DNA from: Hyphochytrium catenoides
Lineage: Eukaryota; Protista; Hyphochytriomycota
DNA: 64,000 bases
Direction of reading: 5' to 3'
Assembly (NCBI GenBank): GCA_900088475.1
Contig: FLMG01004374.1
Span: 62,001 to 126,000 of the forward strand
Shown: positions 57,777 to 64,000 of the stretch, piece after piece
Layout: every line of letters begins with the position of its first letter
How positions within the stretch are numbered: the stretch's first letter is position 1
Position numbers and translations under genes: made by a program
Notes under the pieces: model-generated
What the model was told of the DNA's origin: nothing
Seen by the model: the letters and a program-made list of their open reading frames with translations, nothing else
Databases searched by the model: none

Positions 57777-60700
57777 ATGATGAGTAGTGGGAGTTCAAGA
57801 CAGGCGAACTTGCAGCGAATCGTCCTGAGAAGAGAGTTGACCGGAGAATCAAGCGCTCATCATCAGATTATCCTCGGCCATGGGGCCTTAATGCGGCGCC
57901 TAGAATGCGTAAAGGAGCTGGAGGGCCACAGTGGCTGCGTCAATCGTATGAGTTGGAATGAAGACGGTGGGATTCTGGCCAGTGTCAGTGATGATCTACA
58001 CCTTTGCCTTTGGGAGCACGGCTCCTGGAGGCTGAGGTCGAAGATCAACACTGGTCATAGCAGGAACATCTTTGGTGTGCGCTTTCTGCCTGATCGGAAC
58101 AGCGAAGTCATCGTGACAGGTATATAGATTAGCGCACTCTCCTTCACGGACGCGGGAGCTCATGTGTGGCTCCCGAGCACATGAGAGTGACGCTGGCATC
58201 CTAACTCTATTTCCTTTCTGAATCTGCCGATCACGACCATGACGGCGACGACAAGTTGCTTACTGACCTCTCACGTCCTCAGAATCAGTTCCCTACCTAA
58301 TTTCCTCTTCATTCTCGTCCATATCTCTCGGATGCGGTATCTTTACTCTTTTAACCATGCTCCTGTTCTTCTCCTTCGCCCTATTGACGCTTGCTACTAG
58401 TCATTCATAACGTCCTTTTCTCATAAGTTCTCTTTGACGTGGCTCAGGTGCAATGGACTGCGAAGTCCGTCTTCATTGCCTCAACTCCTCCACGCCCAGG
58501 TCTGTCTTCCGCGGACATGAGGGACGAGTCAAGGACGTGGCGGTTGCGCCTGACGATAGGAATCTGTTTTGGAGCGCTAGTGAAGACGGAACAGTTAGGC
58601 AATACGATGTAAGAGCCATGAGTGCGGGCAGGAGTCGGACGACATACAACGGAGATCCTGTTTACACAGGCGACATCCTTATAGATTGCGGCTACCTCAC
58701 CTTTAAAAGTGGAGGGATCTCAAGAGTGGCTAAAGCTATGTCCTTGGACATAAACCCGGTAGACACTACGAAGGTAGTGGTCGGCTCTGTGGACAATGCT
58801 GTCCGTGTATATGACAGGAGAATGCTCACGCCGCAGGTACGCTATTGGAGTATTCGGGGCCTCTCACTCCTGCGGACGCCAAATCCGTTCCTGTCCGCGT
58901 CGCCTCTATGTTCTCCGTGCTTGTCTCTAAGACATACGTCGCTCTCTCTTCCCTCCATCTTCAGTTGGTCTACGCGGTCTTTCCTTTATCCGTCTTACGA
59001 AGTACTCTCTTAGGGAGGTGCACTTGGAAATCAGGACGGCCGCCAAGAAACTTTGCCGGTTATCAAGCTCCGTCCTGGCCATGTACCCGAGCAGATCCGG
59101 CGGTACAGCGCCTCATACATTACGTCTGTACAATATAACAGGCAAGGAACCGAAGTACTAGCCAGTTACCATGACGACAATATCTATCTATTCTCCCTTG
59201 GCCGGGAGGATGACAGGCTTGAGATAGAGAAGGAGTTTTGGGCACAAAACAAGTCAAGAAGAGACGACAGAGGGGACCTAGCGGGAAATGAAAGAGTCGG
59301 AGAGAGATCTGGATATGGACAGTCCTCCTCTTCCGTCCCCCCTTTGAGTAGAAAAAGCGACCTACGATGGGTCTACCTTGCATTAGAAAAGGCGGAGAGG
59401 CTGCAATGCGATGGTAAACACATAGCAGCTATACGCTGCTTGTCGCAGCCGATTGGACTCTTAGGACAGAACTGCCCGTCCGCGCTCTATCTCGCTCGCG
59501 CCCACTCTTTCCTAAACCGCAAGTGGAAAGGTGATGCTTACCAGGCCCAGTTGGACTGCGTTCAGGCTCTACAATTGGAGAATAACCGGAGTCCAGGGCT
59601 GAAAGAAAGTGATAGACGGCGGTGCTTGGAGGTCCTGCTAAAGGTATGTCCGTCGCATACCATCTAATGCCCTCAGTATTGGATCTCCTGCGCTACATGT
59701 CTTCCGTAATGTCTAACATCGCCTTGGCGTGTTCTCAAAGGCATACAAGAAACAGAAGAAGCATCAATCTGCAGAGAAGCTCCGGAAGTATCTCAAGGAA
59801 AGTTATCAAGATTTCGAAGACGAGGAAGACAAAGGTAGCGAAGAAGCCACCAATTTTGTTCCTAACTTGGCTGTCCACCTTCTTCTTCTGTACCTGCACT
59901 TTCTGGAGAACAGGCAGCGGCTTACTGAGCTCTTGTCCCTGCAGAGAGCTCTGGCGCGGAAGACTCAAACTCAGATTCTGACGGAATGGGTGATGATGAA
60001 GGTGAGCTTTTGGACATTCACTGATGAAAGTATAAAAAGAGGATTGAAGAAATCGGTGAGATAATATAATAAGCTGAGAGAGGCAGGCTGGGAAGAACTA
60101 GATAGAGACAACATCTTTACTGGATGAATGTCAGGGGAGAGTTTAGGACCCAGAGTCATTGTGGCTGGGGGCTGGTGCTTCGAAGGCTGGCAGGATGAGC
60201 CAAGCAACTGACCTCGTGTGCGCGCAGTGTGCACTCCGCCTGTTGCGGACGGGGGCGGCACTGCGTCAGTTTATCCTCGGTGGGTGACTCGGCACATCCA
60301 GCGATATGTAGGGCATAGTAACTACAGGGTAAGTAAGCTCTACCGACCTGTTTCCCAAGCTAATGGCTTCACTCGACCACACTTGCATCTGTTCCATACC
60401 TATACCCCTCACTCCCCTCCCACGAGTCCTTGACATATTCTGATAAAGTTTCGTCGATGCCTCCTTCAAGACGGATATCAAGGAAGCCAAATTCTTTGGC
60501 CAGGACGGCGAGCACATAGTAGGTGGCAGCGATGATGGACGAATCTTTGTCTGGGACAAAAGAACAGGAAATCTGGTCCAGTCCATGCATGGCGATGCCG
60601 ACGTCGTAAACTGCGTGCAGTCTCATCCTTTCGAGACCTTGCTGGCATCGTCGGGCATAGAGGACGTGGTCAGGATATGGTCGCCCGTGGGGGAGAGCAA

Positions 60701-60848
60701 GATGACCGAGGACCTCGAGGCTTGGGATGAGGTGATGGAAAGCAACCAGCGCCGGTTGATCCATCTGTCTCTCTCTCATTTCGCGCTGCATGAGTATCTT
60801 TTTAGGCACACAAGGGAGTTCTCGACAGAACGGTGCGCACAGAGCTAG
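57777..60848 (+). CDS. WDTC1: WD40 + TPR protein, WDTC1/DCAF9 (adipose) homolog, CRL4 substrate receptor family
   Basis: ELEGHSGCVNRMSWNEDG..LASVSDD, TGHSRNIFGVRF, HEGRVKDV..FWSASEDGTVRQYDVR, VRVYDRRML, EVLASYHDDNIYLF, TPR segment LYLARAHSFLNRKWKGDAYQAQLDC, RYVGHSNY..TDIKEAKFFG..GGSDDGRIFVWD, GDADVVNCVQSHP..LASSGIE. Ends CAQS*. Confidence 0.9.
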
Positions 60849-60972
60849 TGTAAACTGTCAACTTAGTTTCTTTGGCAACAACTTCTTGTTCATACAATCT
60901 GTAGAGGTCTAAGTAGGGAATGCCAAAGAACGGTGAAAATAGGGAAGAGTCATTGGACTTCAAGGGACTGTT

Positions 60973-63877
60973 CTAAACCGATCCCTGCTGTAGCATTGCC
61001 GTGGCGACACGGTTAAAGCCCAAAATATTGGCACCTATAGCAGAAAAGGTTATAGAGCGTAAGTAGGAATCAAGACGACGAAAGTACAACTGCTGTGAAA
61101 TAGTGAGGTGAGATGGTTGTGAGGCACGGAGTGGGCGACAATGATAAACGAGGAAAAAGCAAACAAAGCGTTAGATAAGGCTGAGGTGATTACGAGAGAG
61201 AACATATCTGCATAGAGGGAACTAGGGTGTACGCCACTTGCCAAAGCGCAGACTCTCTTTCACCAACCTGCGTAAAGGTCTCCTCTCTTGTTATATTCTT
61301 GAGCTGTTAAAGCAGCGCTGTGGTGGACATCCTGCATCAGCTCTTTCACTCGTTCGTCTAGCTCTTCGTGGCTTCGTCCCATGGAGAGAGGCACATCCTG
61401 CACCGCCAGCTGGCCACAGTTGGCAGCCTTACCCGGACCGAACAGAACACCTCTCTTCTTTAGCACTGCCATAGCCTGTTACCATCAAACAGACAGATAA
61501 TAGTATGTTTGCATGAGCACCCACGCATGTTTCTAAGCAGCTATTGAGGAGGAGAGGGAAAAGAAAGAACACGACTAGAAAACAGCTTGAATAGAGCAAC
61601 GGAGGCGAGCATCAGGTGGTAAGGAATATGATCTGCGTCCAACCTCGGGGGTGGTTGCATTGTAGGCGCCCTCTACTACGGCCTTTACGCCACTGGCACA
61701 CACTTTCTCCGCAATTTTGTCTGTTTATACAAGGGATACGGAGATGATAATGAGACAGAAGATCAAATAAGCGTAAAGTCATGTAGGCACTGCCAAGAGG
61801 AATGACAGAGCACTACACCAGATACCATACATATAACGATAATGGGCGGTCGAAGGGGCAATCACAAGTCCTGAGACGTGGATGCTAATAAAGGCAAGAG
61901 CATGCTGATCAGAAACTACAGCTCAAACATACCTGTTATCTGGTACTGCGAAGCACAGGGGAACAGAAGGTCACAGGGTACTTCCCAGCAAGAAGCTTCC
62001 CCAGTCGGGTGGTACTTGGCAGTAGTAGAGCTCATAATATAAGCGCCCACACGTGCGGCTCGGTCTTTCTTGATTTTCTTTAATGTTCTCAGCTTGTCCT
62101 CATCAAAGCCTACAAGACACAGCGCCACAAATGCAGTTTTATGAAGGTATCACATATCATATATAAGGTGTAAAGTGGTGAGCCCACGCCAACCATGATC
62201 CCAGACTTTATAGACGTTCTAACCTTCTGGTTCATAGATCCAACCCGAAGTGTCACAGAGCGTAAGGACCACAGCGCCTAATTCCTGCAGCTTGTGTGCC
62301 AGGCTAAGGGCAACGTTGCCACTACCAGTGATGACACATCTGCAGGCATCGGAAAGAGGAAAGGGTCGCACCATAGAAAGCGTGACTAGAAGGTTTGGAC
62401 CGCCATGGGGTTAAACGGAGAATTACCTCTTGCCCTCCAGTGACTCTCCTCTTGCGTTGAGCATCTCTTGAGCAAAGTAAGCGACACCAAACCCGGTGGC
62501 CTCTGGGAAGGTGATAACACCGTTCCCAATCATCCCAGACTCGCTCTACCATTGACAGTACGAGAGATTTGCTCAGATAGACTAGCATAGCGCAATTGGT
62601 GTATAGCAACAAGCAGAAGGACGCGTTGGCGTCCAAAGCACTAGATATATCAAACGGAAGCGCGATGAGAGCAAAAAGGAAACGAAAGTGCTACCGTTTA
62701 TGTCAAAATTGCGGCTGTTTGACATAAGCCCTTTGTGAGGTCTTTCGACCAAAGGAGGTGCATCCATAATTCGTCTGCATGGTAGCTGACAGAAGAGAGG
62801 CAGAGTGCGGCCCACCTTTCCATACTTCTGCTTGATACGCTTGTACTGGCCGTACAAGAAGCCAGTCTCCTTCATGCCACACCCCATGTCTGGCGTAGGA
62901 ATGTCTACATTAGGCCCAATGTAGTTCACAAGCTCAGTCATGAAAGACTGGCAGAAACGCTGGATCTCGGCCTCACTCTTCCCAACAGGATTGAAATCGG
63001 CGCCACTAAACGCAACATGAGACGGAACCAGGAGAGGGAGGGCGGAAGGGGGGCGAATCCATGAGAGCGTTGCCAGCAGCTAGGTAAGATAGTAGTAGTA
63101 GGGCACCATAGGGAAAAATCATATCTAAACAGTAGCTGCAACACTTTGGTTTTGATAAAACGAGAGCGAAGTGGGTGAGGTATTGATACTCCGTATACCA
63201 TACCCTGCAGCAGCTCCGATCTCGATGTCTGACGCAATTGCATGCCTGAAGACGTTCTCGAAAGCGATAGACTTTACGGTGCCTAGAGGATGAAGAGGAT
63301 GACAGGTAAATGAGGCAGCACAGTGTCAAAGAGCGTCAGAAATGGTTCGACGGATCTGAAACAGCTATTAAAAGACGCAGAAAACCCTCACCCAGTCCGG
63401 TGCCCTTATAGAAGCGTATGCCGCCCTCATAGAGCCCCAACGCCGAGGAATACTGGACACGATATCCTCTATTCACACGAGCGTTCCCCGTATCGTCTAG
63501 CCACGGGACTCGGAACTGTAGGGTCAAGTTAGGAAGGAAGAGATGGAATGTTCAGGCAACGGATCTATCTACGGGTTTTACCCCGTCTTTCTCTTCTCGC
63601 TCCCCGTTTCTCGCAGATCTCAGCACAGCAATGGAGCCGCTTCATTGACGTCCCCCACTCAAACATCTCTCCCAAATCCTCGCTCGTGATTGGGCCTCTG
63701 CCGCCTTAAGGGAGACGGAGGAGCCTTTGCCCAAGTTCATACATTGCTGGAACTTCTCTGCGCACCTGAATGACTCTCTCAGGCTCCATCAACTGCTTCA
63801 TCACCCAAGCGTAACGTGGGTACCGGTCAAAGACAGGGGCAAGTGAGAGAGTCAACGACTCCATTGCTTGCAGATAT
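60973..63877 (-). CDS. NADP-glutamate dehydrogenase (GdhA-type)-like protein with substituted active-site lysines; 5' part lies beyond the window
   Basis: In-frame spliced exons: YLQAMESL...MEPERVIQ|FRVPWLDDTGNARVNRGYRVQYSSALGLYEGGIRF...|..AFENVFRHAIASDIEIGAAAG|GADFNPVGKSEAEIQRFCQSFMTEL...GQYKRI...|PEATGFGVAYF...|CVITGSGNVA...|..FPCASQ..|EGAYN..|FGPGKAANCG...|GANILGFNRVATAMLQQGSV* (stop 60973-60975). Confidence 0.92.
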
Positions 63878-64000
63878 CTGAGTTTCAAAGCAGCATTAAG
63901 CGCTGCTAATGGCAAATCTAAAGGAGGGGAATATGGGAGATGCTATGCAGATGTGCAGCATACTTCCCGTAAAGGAAAGGACAAGACAGCATCTATAGAT

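What the first reader, a model, noticed from the sequence alone, without database searches (positions are those of the whole stretch)
60973..63877. Intact but catalytically 'dead' glutamate dehydrogenase: candidate GDH pseudoenzyme or regulatory subunit
Seen: the reading frame is uninterrupted over all exons in the window, with canonical splice sites and a normal GDH C-terminus. Compared with hexameric NADP-GDH (E. coli GdhA numbering from memory), YKGG reads YEGG (K92 to E, codon 63426-63428). EQxFKN reads ENVFRH (K116 to R, 63245-63247). The catalytic GGGKGG reads GAAAGG (K128 to A, 63206-63208). The TGK...IRPEAT segment reads SESGMIGNGVITFPEAT, and GGVAxSGLE reads GQLAVQDVP. In contrast the dinucleotide-binding GSGNVA motif, EPERVIQFRV, RFCQSFMTEL and GKAAN are retained. 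Established: these lysines bind the glutamate carboxylates and form the imine, and Thermus thermophilus uses a non-catalytic GdhA paralog as a regulatory subunit of a hetero-hexamer. Inference: selective loss of only the substrate pocket, including a charge reversal, with an intact fold suggests a maintained regulatory or NADP(H)-sensing subunit, or a new ligand specificity, in eukaryotic nitrogen metabolism.
Basis: partly seen in the sequence, partly recalled or inferred. Interest (0 to 1): 0.85.

Follow-up and report, generated by a model that had tools for sequence, protein, structure and literature searches.

The report
Ancient catalytically dead glutamate dehydrogenase family
This intact ten-exon gene encodes a glutamate dehydrogenase look-alike that lacks the residues needed for catalysis, and it belongs to an old family kept in oomycetes, diatoms and brown algae, where databases label it an active NADP-dependent enzyme.

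Summary
A minus-strand gene (60973-63877, all introns GT-AG, N-terminus beyond the window) encodes a 50-kDa-type GDH homologue. YKGG reads YEGG, FKN reads FRH, GGGKGG reads GAAAGG, IRPEAT reads ITFPEAT and GGVAVSG reads GQLAVQD.

It is neither a lone oddity nor a decaying pseudogene. It is the orthologue of a large clade, about 140 sequences here. The clade covers oomycetes (including the Phytophthora infestans "NADP-specific GDH, putative"), diatoms, brown algae, Nannochloropsis, chrysophytes and others. All members lack the lysines equivalent to C. symbiosum K89 and K125, and 96% lack the catalytic Asp, which the window protein unusually keeps.

The clade is one branch (SH-aLRT 100) whose topology follows stramenopile phylogeny. 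The window protein sits beside the oomycetes. The family keeps the domain-I core, the GxGxxA fingerprint and its own signature residues. It also carries a family-specific N-terminal motif (VHG..WRNKPLFRREGD) behind a mitochondrial-type presequence.

Pocket residues vary between lineages, which argues for loss of the site rather than a new substrate. The "maintained pseudoenzyme" reading is therefore supported. The Thermus-like "regulatory subunit of a hetero-hexamer" reading is untested and has no partner in sight. Ten literature searches found no description of this family.

The parts
63766..63877 (-). First exon inside the window (...YLQAMESLTLSLAPVFDRYPRYAWVMKQLMEPERVIQ). The probable acceptor is ctcag|A at 63877. 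An alternative in-frame acceptor lies at 63917.
   Evidence: Splice sites. tblastn homology to orthologue P0154 starts at 63876. Residues from 63878-63915 do not align to the family.
63392..63515 (-). Exon with FRVPWLDD...GLYEGGIRF. The gamma-carboxyl lysine (C. symbiosum K89, S. pombe K77) is replaced by Glu at codon 63426-63428.
   Evidence: alignment to 5ijz; residue role.
63204..63282 (-). Exon with FENVFRH (Q to N, K to R at 63245-63247, N to H) and IGAAAG. The catalytic Lys of GGGKGG is replaced by Ala at 63206-63208.
62816..63005 (-). Exon with GADFNPVGKSEAEIQRFCQSFMTEL...DIPTPDMGCG...GQYKR. It holds the conserved domain-I core. The catalytic Asp is retained (codon GAC), where 96% of the family has Gly.
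62427..62545 (-). Exon SESGMIGNGVITFPEATGFG.... The TGK and Arg (IRPEAT) substrate and nicotinamide contacts are replaced (Arg to Phe).
62224..62339 (-). Exon with the Rossmann fingerprint GSGNVA and beta2 ...LCDTSG (Asp kept; the 2'-phosphate Ser is replaced by Thr).
61933..62109 (-). Exon with KIKKDRAARVGAYIMSSTTAKY, which carries the family-specific signature (I, A, G, I, S, T) and the conserved 2'-phosphate Lys, and with PCASQYQ in place of PCATQNE.
61644..61720 (-). Exon with EGAYNATTPE. The nicotinamide-contact Asn of GAN is replaced by Tyr.
61268..61475 (-). Exon with GPGKAANCGQLAVQDVP. Gly to Gln, Val to Leu and the gamma-carboxyl Ser to Gln, with a short deletion after it. Also carries the family signature EYN..GD.
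60973..61034 (-). Last exon GANILGFNRVATAMLQQGSV and stop codon TAG (60973-60975). This is a normal GDH C-terminal helix.

Best explanation
The gene encodes the orthologue, from a close relative of the oomycetes, of an ancient stramenopile-wide family derived from the hexameric 50-kDa NADP-type glutamate dehydrogenase. This family has lost GDH catalysis.

Shown here:
- The gene is intact.
- The K89, K113, K125, R205 and S380 equivalents are replaced.
- The same K89 and K125 losses occur in every member of a single clade whose topology tracks organismal phylogeny.
- The domain-I core, the GxGxxA fingerprint, the beta2 Asp, one 2'-phosphate lysine and a set of family-specific residues are strongly conserved. 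The former substrate pocket drifts between lineages.
- The family has an extra conserved N-terminal motif behind a basic, acid-free presequence.

Inferred:
- The protein folds like GDH. An orthologue was modelled; the window protein was not.
- It is imported into mitochondria.
- It assembles through the conserved domain-I core, most likely as a homo-hexamer.
- It acts without turnover, as a nucleotide-binding and/or protein-binding scaffold or regulator. It would use the conserved adenosine-side pocket, the family-specific surface patches and the N-terminal motif, not the glutamate site.

What it regulates is unknown.
For: - Gene model and substitutions.
- Family: oomycete and ochrophyte members were found. 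In a residue table of 142 dead members against 106 canonical, K89 is E in 58%, K125 is V/A/Y/H, and D165 is G in 96%.
- Single clade with SH-aLRT 100 and branch length 0.37. The window protein is sister to P0151 plus the oomycetes, with support 91.
- Constraint on the window copy: 99 of 109 family-conserved positions; 18 of 20 family-specific signature residues; no indels at exon junctions. Against orthologue L001, dN is 0.39 with saturated dS, and codon positions 1+2 differ at 32% against 65% at position 3.
- Core conservation of 0.96 or more for the EPER..FRV.W.DD.G, RFCQSFMTEL and GQYKR blocks.
- N-terminal motif W[RK]N[KQ]P in 109 of 142 dead members and 0 of 106 canonical. The median presequence is 41.5 aa with no acidic residue in its first 25.
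- Fold: the AF2 model of orthologue P0154 has pLDDT 89.5, and its best match is C. glutamicum GDH with TM 0.84/0.94.
- Residue roles come from the S. pombe Gdh1 complex structure, PMC12301742.
- Obligate biotrophs (Plasmopara, Hyaloperonospora, Peronospora) keep the gene.
Against: - No biochemical data exist for any member, so residual or different catalysis cannot be excluded.
- The window protein keeps the catalytic Asp, the Rossmann Asn and a Thr at the 2'-phosphate Ser position. It is therefore less eroded than most of the family.
- Peronosporalean members have His at the catalytic-Lys position.
- Several NADP contacts (the K121, S252, N230 and N340 equivalents) are not conserved in the family, so nucleotide binding is uncertain.
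- Mitochondrial targeting and hexamer formation are inferred from sequence only.
- The window lacks the N-terminal exon or exons, so the family motif is not verified for this gene.
- No RNA evidence for this gene was found. An exon-junction search returned nothing, and no matching protein is in the databases.
Confidence: 0.8

Rival explanations
1. Non-catalytic regulatory subunit that co-assembles with an active 50-kDa GDH into hetero-hexamers, as GdhA does with GdhB in Thermus thermophilus.
For: Thermus offers a precedent for a catalytically inactive regulatory GDH subunit (PMC9570180; PMC12301742). The oligomerisation core of domain I is highly conserved in the dead family. Triparma species have both a canonical and a dead form.
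Against: No canonical 50-kDa GDH from any oomycete appeared among the 120 best relatives of the canonical stramenopile enzyme, or in the other searches. This is a weak negative. The canonical Triparma enzyme has a hydrophobic, signal-peptide-like N-terminus, whereas the dead family has a mitochondrial-type presequence. Thermus GdhA belongs to the other GDH subclass (22% identity, TM 0.66), so this could only be an analogy.
Confidence: 0.1
2. Neo-functionalised enzyme: the reshaped pocket binds a different substrate and catalysis uses other residues.
For: The fold and Rossmann fingerprint are intact. Asp is retained in the window protein, and Peronosporales have His at the Lys position. K89 and S380 are the known specificity determinants in this superfamily (established knowledge; roles).
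Against: The pocket positions are not conserved within the family: K89 is E/A/M/Q/I/V, K113 is S/R/T/A, K125 is V/A/Y/H, R205 is Y/F/H/W and S380 is N/H/T. The strongest new states are Gly and Ala. The nicotinamide contacts are degenerate. The catalytic Lys is universal in active Glu/Leu/Phe/Val dehydrogenases (established knowledge).
Confidence: 0.08
3. Recently inactivated, decaying pseudogene, or a gene-model artefact.
For: No transcript or protein evidence for this particular gene was found. The window copy is at the low end of family conservation (0.91 against a median of 0.98).
Against: The frame is open for 433 codons across ten exons with canonical splice sites, and orthologues show no junction indels. 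The same substitutions occur in orthologues from intron-poor genomes and from transcriptomes. The window's end branch of 0.68 matches the root-to-tip length of its oomycete sisters. 18 of 20 family signature residues are kept.
Confidence: 0.02

Closest known systems
Hexameric 50-kDa NADP-dependent glutamate dehydrogenase (E. coli GdhA, C. glutamicum, C. symbiosum, P. falciparum GDH1/2; Pfam PF02812 + PF00208)
   Same: Both Pfam domains are present. The window protein is 43-46% identical to canonical enzymes. The orthologue model superposes on 5ijz with TM 0.84/0.94. The domain-I core, GxGxxA and the C-terminal helix are conserved.
   Different: The gamma- and alpha-carboxyl lysines, the catalytic lysine, the Arg of IRPEAT and the Ser of GGVAVSG are all replaced. 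There is a short deletion after the KAAN segment. The family carries an extra N-terminal motif and its own signature residues.
Thermus thermophilus GdhA, the regulatory subunit of the GdhA/GdhB hetero-hexamer
   Same: Both are GDH paralogues reported as catalytically inactive and used for regulation (PMC9570180). Both keep the hexamer-forming fold.
   Different: GdhA belongs to a different GDH subclass (22% identity to the orthologue model) and is bacterial. No active partner was identified here. Leucine-site residues were not examined.
Database entries annotated as NADP-GDH in stramenopiles (P. infestans EEY53988.1/D0N8V3, Ectocarpus CBN74525.1 'Glutamate dehydrogenase 1 (NADP-dependent)', Fistulifera GAX26361.1, Nannochloropsis GAB5033502.1, Saprolegnia SPRG_01659)
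   Same: These are the true orthologues. They fall in the same clade, show the same losses, and are 50-53% identical to the window protein for the oomycete members.
   Different: The window protein keeps Asp at the catalytic-Asp position and several other canonical states (R97, E113, N243, N374 in P0246 numbering). Its gene has at least ten exons, whereas the metagenomic relative P0151 is encoded almost without introns.

Membership tests
Glu/Leu/Phe/Val dehydrogenase superfamily (homology) | ELFV_dehydrog_N and ELFV_dehydrog domains in order | tested here: met
   Pfam hits on exons 2 and 4 (N domain) and on exons 5, 6, 7 and 9 (C domain). PDB sequence matches to GDHs.
Glu/Leu/Phe/Val dehydrogenase superfamily (homology) | GDH two-domain fold | tested here: inconclusive
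   The fold was modelled only for orthologue P0154 (pLDDT 89.5; TM 0.84/0.94 to 5ijz). The spliced window protein has no reference and could not be submitted.
Active glutamate dehydrogenase (EC 1.4.1.2-4) | Catalytic lysine in GGGKGG (C. symbiosum K125, S. pombe K113) | tested here: not met
   Reads GAAAGG, with Ala at 63206-63208.
Active glutamate dehydrogenase (EC 1.4.1.2-4) | Substrate carboxylate ligands (K89, Q110, K113, R205 and S380 equivalents) | tested here: not met
   They read E, N, R, F and Q respectively. Roles are from PMC12301742.
Active glutamate dehydrogenase (EC 1.4.1.2-4) | Catalytic aspartate (D165 equivalent) | tested here: met
   DIPTPDMG keeps Asp, whereas 96% of the dead family has Gly.
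Active glutamate dehydrogenase (EC 1.4.1.2-4) | Complete NADP(H) site | tested here: inconclusive
   Kept: GSGNVA, Asp, the Lys equivalent to K276, and the pyrophosphate Gly. Ser252 equivalent is replaced by Thr. Lost: K121 equivalent (Val), N340 equivalent (Tyr) and R192 equivalent (Phe).
Stramenopile catalytically dead GDH-like family (unnamed; defined here) | Falls inside the clade that lacks K89 and K125 | tested here: met
   Tree: the clade has support 100, and the window protein is sister to P0151 plus the oomycetes with support 91.
Stramenopile catalytically dead GDH-like family (unnamed; defined here) | Family-specific signature residues | tested here: met
   18 of 20 are present, and 99 of 109 conserved positions are kept.
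Stramenopile catalytically dead GDH-like family (unnamed; defined here) | N-terminal presequence plus the VHG..WRNKPLFRREGD motif | not testable with these tools
   This part is encoded beyond coordinate 64000. Homology to orthologues starts at their residue ~81.
Thermus GdhA-type regulatory GDH subunit | Forms a hetero-hexamer with an active paralogue in the same compartment | not testable with these tools
   Only indirect evidence: no oomycete canonical 50-kDa GDH was seen, and the N-termini differ.
Thermus GdhA-type regulatory GDH subunit | Common descent with GdhA | tested here: not met
   The dead family branches from the NADP-type 50-kDa class. Thermus chains are 22% identical with TM 0.66.

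The most novel reading that the evidence does not exclude
The dead GDH is an ancient mitochondrial metabolite or nucleotide sensor conserved across stramenopiles. It would use the conserved adenosine-side pocket and its basic N-terminal motif to control another enzyme or complex. One candidate is the large NAD-GDH of oomycetes. From my memory of the 1970s work of LeJohn, not verified here, that enzyme was activated by NADP(H), and NADP-GDH activity was not found in these organisms.
Probability: 0.12. Interest if true: 0.85.

Novelty: new variant of a known kind. Interest (0 to 1): 0.66.

Why it matters
Genes of this family are annotated as NADP-specific glutamate dehydrogenase in several important organisms. 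These include the potato blight agent P. infestans, the brown-alga model Ectocarpus, Nannochloropsis and many diatoms.

Such labels probably enter metabolic reconstructions. They also shape how transcriptome studies are read when "GDH" moves with nitrogen status. An Ectocarpus "glutamate dehydrogenase 1" is reported as co-repressed with nitrogen-assimilation genes (PMC4108028). I did not verify that this gene is the family member.

If the family cannot make or break glutamate, a presumed mitochondrial ammonium-assimilation or glutamate-catabolism step is mis-assigned across a major eukaryotic group.

The family has been retained since before ochrophytes and oomycetes diverged, and obligate biotrophs with reduced nitrogen metabolism still keep it. 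That retention points to an important non-catalytic job. It is a clean, widespread natural example of an enzyme turned pseudoenzyme, and it can be tested in tractable systems (Phaeodactylum, Phytophthora).

Tried and rejected
- **Looking for this gene's own product.** Neither the representative search with exon 4 nor the word-indexed search returned a protein more than 56% identical over the full model. I therefore obtained no annotated or transcript-derived copy and no N-terminus.
- **RNA evidence.** I searched JGI metagenome and metatranscriptome contigs for the exon 3/4 junction. There were no matches.
- **Alternative exons or a second GDH module in the window.** tblastn found none.
- **dN/dS.** Only one relative had DNA in hand (L001). 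dS is saturated, so no ratio can be given.
- **Pfam on the N-terminal extension.** No family was hit.
- **Location of the N-terminal motif on the fold.** Model coordinates are not exposed to scripts. Only the confidence (pLDDT 80-90) is known.
- **Literature.** Ten searches found no paper describing a catalytically dead GDH family in stramenopiles. The classical oomycete GDH enzymology could not be retrieved.
- **P. infestans proteomics.** The nitroproteome paper lists "Glutamate dehydrogenase PITG_07671". I could not map that identifier to the dead orthologue.
- **Top representative hits with two matched stretches (P0001-P0004).** These are canonical GDH fragments with duplicated segments. 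I treated them as assembly or gene-call artefacts.
Full report
**1. What is in the sequence**

Reading 60500-64000 on the minus strand and joining ten segments gives one open frame of 433 codons ending at TAG 60973-60975. Each segment is bounded by AG upstream and GT downstream. The exons are:
- 63877 (or 63917)-63766
- 63515-63392
- 63282-63204
- 63005-62816
- 62545-62427
- 62339-62224
- 62109-61933
- 61720-61644
- 61475-61268
- 61034-60973

Individual exons hit Pfam ELFV_dehydrog_N and ELFV_dehydrog and solved hexameric NADP-type GDHs. tblastn with a canonical GDH and with an orthologue finds a single GDH-like gene in the 64-kb window. The matches coincide with these exons, homology begins at 63876, and no alternative exon carries canonical motifs. 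Pairwise alignments to three orthologues and one canonical enzyme place no gap at any exon junction. The splice model is therefore sound.

The in-frame stretch 63878-63915 is open but does not align to relatives. The N-terminal exon or exons lie outside the window.

**2. The observation**

- YKGG reads YEGG (63426-63428). This is confirmed by alignment to the C. glutamicum structure sequence.
- FEQxFKN reads FENVFRH (Arg at 63245-63247).
- GGGKGG reads GAAAGG (63206-63208).
- IRPEAT reads ITFPEAT.
- GGVAVSG reads GQLAVQD.

Residue roles come from the S. pombe Gdh1 complex with 2-iminoglutarate and NADP+ (PMC12301742):
- Lys77, Arg192 and Ser377 bind the gamma-carboxylate.
- Gln98, Lys101 and Lys113 bind the alpha-carboxylate.
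- Asp153 contacts the imino nitrogen.
- Ser228, Asn230, Ser252, Lys121, Lys276 and Asn340 contact NADP+.

In the window protein the substrate positions read E, F, Q / N, R, A / D. Every substrate ligand except the aspartate is gone.

**3. It is a member of a large, old family**

A search of 1.84 billion cluster representatives with exon 4 returned fragments carrying the same defects, such as GGAAGG and YMGG. Using one of them (P0006) as a full-length query found oomycete proteins from Pythium, Globisporangium, Phytophthora, Peronospora, Peronosclerospora, Saprolegnia, Achlya and Aphanomyces.

A profile of 14 divergent members then returned about 120 more. These came from brown algae, diatoms, Triparma, Nannochloropsis, Heterosigma, Ochromonas, Tribonema, Chrysoparadoxa, Octactis and many marine metatranscriptome contigs.

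In one alignment, 142 sequences lack both the K89 and K125 equivalents, and 106 are fully canonical. In the dead set:
- K89 is E in 58%, otherwise A/M/Q/I/V.
- K113 is S/R/T/A.
- K125 is V/A/Y/H.
- D165 is G in 96%.
- R205 is Y/F/H/W.
- S380 is N/H/T.

The P. infestans entry "NADP-specific glutamate dehydrogenase, putative" (EEY53988.1, D0N8V3) reads YMGG, FRN, GGAHGG and TAGVG. The obligate biotrophs Plasmopara halstedii and Hyaloperonospora brassicae have the same protein.

**4. Phylogeny**

I built a 77-row maximum-likelihood tree (LG+C20, quick search). It separates the dead family from all canonical GDHs by a branch of length 0.37 with SH-aLRT 100.

Inside the family the topology follows organismal relationships:
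- diatoms with Triparma;
- brown algae with Tribonema and Chrysoparadoxa;
- Peronosporales and Pythiales against Saprolegniales.

The window protein is sister to P0151 (a metagenomic eukaryote) plus the oomycetes, with support 91. This fits earlier notes of this scan that the organism is a close relative of oomycetes. Its end branch (0.68) is about as long as the path to its oomycete sisters, so it is not evolving abnormally fast.

A third deep lineage (P0169 and P0170) has lost only K89 and K125 and keeps Q110, K113 and D165. The window protein keeps D165. This pattern fits one early inactivation followed by independent erosion of the rest of the pocket.

**5. Constraint**

The window protein keeps 99 of 109 positions that are at least 90% conserved in the family. 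Two of the ten misses fall in the doubtful 63878-63915 stretch. It also has 18 of the 20 residues that are at least 85% conserved in the family but rare in canonical GDH.

Against the one relative with DNA in hand, dN is 0.39 and dS is saturated. Codon positions 1+2 differ at 32% and position 3 at 65%.

Blocks of domain I (EPER..FRV.W.DD.G..NRG.R, KS..E..RFCQSFMTEL, GQYKR) are at least 96% conserved in both the dead and the canonical sets. The family-specific conserved residues cluster in three places:
- FDR.P.YAW..KQL;
- around the adenosine-side loop (I.K..R.AR.G.YI..ST.A);
- EFN..GD near the C-terminus.

**6. Cofactor site**

The first Gly of GxGxxA is invariant. The second Gly is kept in 85% and the Ala in 97%. 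The beta2 Asp is invariant, and the Lys equivalent to S. pombe K276 is kept in 97%. In contrast, the equivalents of K121, S252, N230 and N340 are variable.

The window protein keeps more of the site than most members: GSGNVA, Thr for S252, and K276. It has Val, Tyr and Phe at the K121, N340 and R192 positions. Binding of some adenine nucleotide is plausible. Productive NADP(H) positioning is doubtful.

**7. N-terminal extension**

Full-length members start with a presequence of about 40 residues. It has no acidic residue in its first 25 positions and is rich in Arg, Ser and Ala. A conserved motif follows, approximately GGVHG(T/S)....W(R/K)N(K/Q)PLF(R/K)R(E/D)GD..F(R/K).G.EA. The motif occurs in 109 of 142 dead members and in none of 106 canonical enzymes. 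The members without it appear to be N-terminally truncated; this was not checked sequence by sequence. It matches no Pfam family.

In the AF2 model of the Globisporangium-type orthologue P0154 (mean pLDDT 89.5), this segment has pLDDT 80-90. It is therefore predicted to pack on the body. The rest of the model superposes on C. glutamicum GDH with TM 0.84/0.94.

**8. Interpretation**

The evidence supports a maintained pseudoenzyme. It does not support a pseudogene, a gene-model artefact, or a re-specified pocket, because pocket residues are not conserved within the family.

The Thermus-like hetero-hexamer model has a documented precedent (PMC9570180). However, a search seeded with the canonical Triparma GDH found no canonical oomycete enzyme among its best 120 relatives. 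The canonical Triparma protein also has a different, signal-peptide-like N-terminus.

I therefore favour a mitochondrial, probably homo-hexameric, non-catalytic protein. It would work through its conserved adenosine-side pocket, its new surface patches and its N-terminal motif. Its target is unknown.

**9. Novelty**

Ten full-text searches found no description of this family. Diatom and brown-alga papers treat genes annotated as GDH as active enzymes; whether those particular genes belong to this family was not checked. The same stretch was flagged independently by another first-stage reader of this scan.

**Limits**
- No biochemical data exist for any member.
- The spliced window protein could not be submitted to the structure or whole-protein tools.
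- The N-terminus lies outside the window.
- No RNA evidence was found for this gene.

Noticed in passing
window 60585-60848 (+): A convergent neighbouring gene ends about 125 bp from the GDH-like stop codon. Its last ORF has a weak WD40 repeat match (E 0.0012, below the Pfam cut-off).
   Followed up: partly
P0240 (Desulfobacterales MAG) and P0194 (metagenome): Two otherwise canonical bacterial GDHs, nested among active enzymes in the tree, have Gln at the catalytic-Lys position (patterns KQKQG and KQKQD). They may be independent inactive variants or sequencing errors.
   Followed up: no
P0169/P0170 (JGI metagenome contigs): A third deep lineage of the dead family, of unknown taxon, has lost only the K89 and K125 equivalents and keeps Q110, K113 and D165. 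It looks like an early stage of pocket erosion.
   Followed up: partly
L001:6001-7344 (ENA metagenome scaffold, P0151): The closest relative outside the named oomycetes is encoded almost without introns. A 56-aa ELFV fragment is called just downstream. The window gene has at least ten exons, so intron density differs strongly between these lineages.
   Followed up: no
P0533, P0539, P0540 (1555 aa) and P0547 (2094 aa): Some Phytophthora and Thraustotheca database entries in the same 90% clusters are very long 'NADP-specific GDH' models. Some cluster members carry protein-kinase names. These are probably merged neighbouring genes, but true fusions were not excluded.
   Followed up: no
P0001-P0004: The top representative-library hits to exon 4 contain two copies of the GGGKGG..GQYKR segment in one short protein. 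They are most likely assembly or gene-call chimeras of canonical GDHs.
   Followed up: partly
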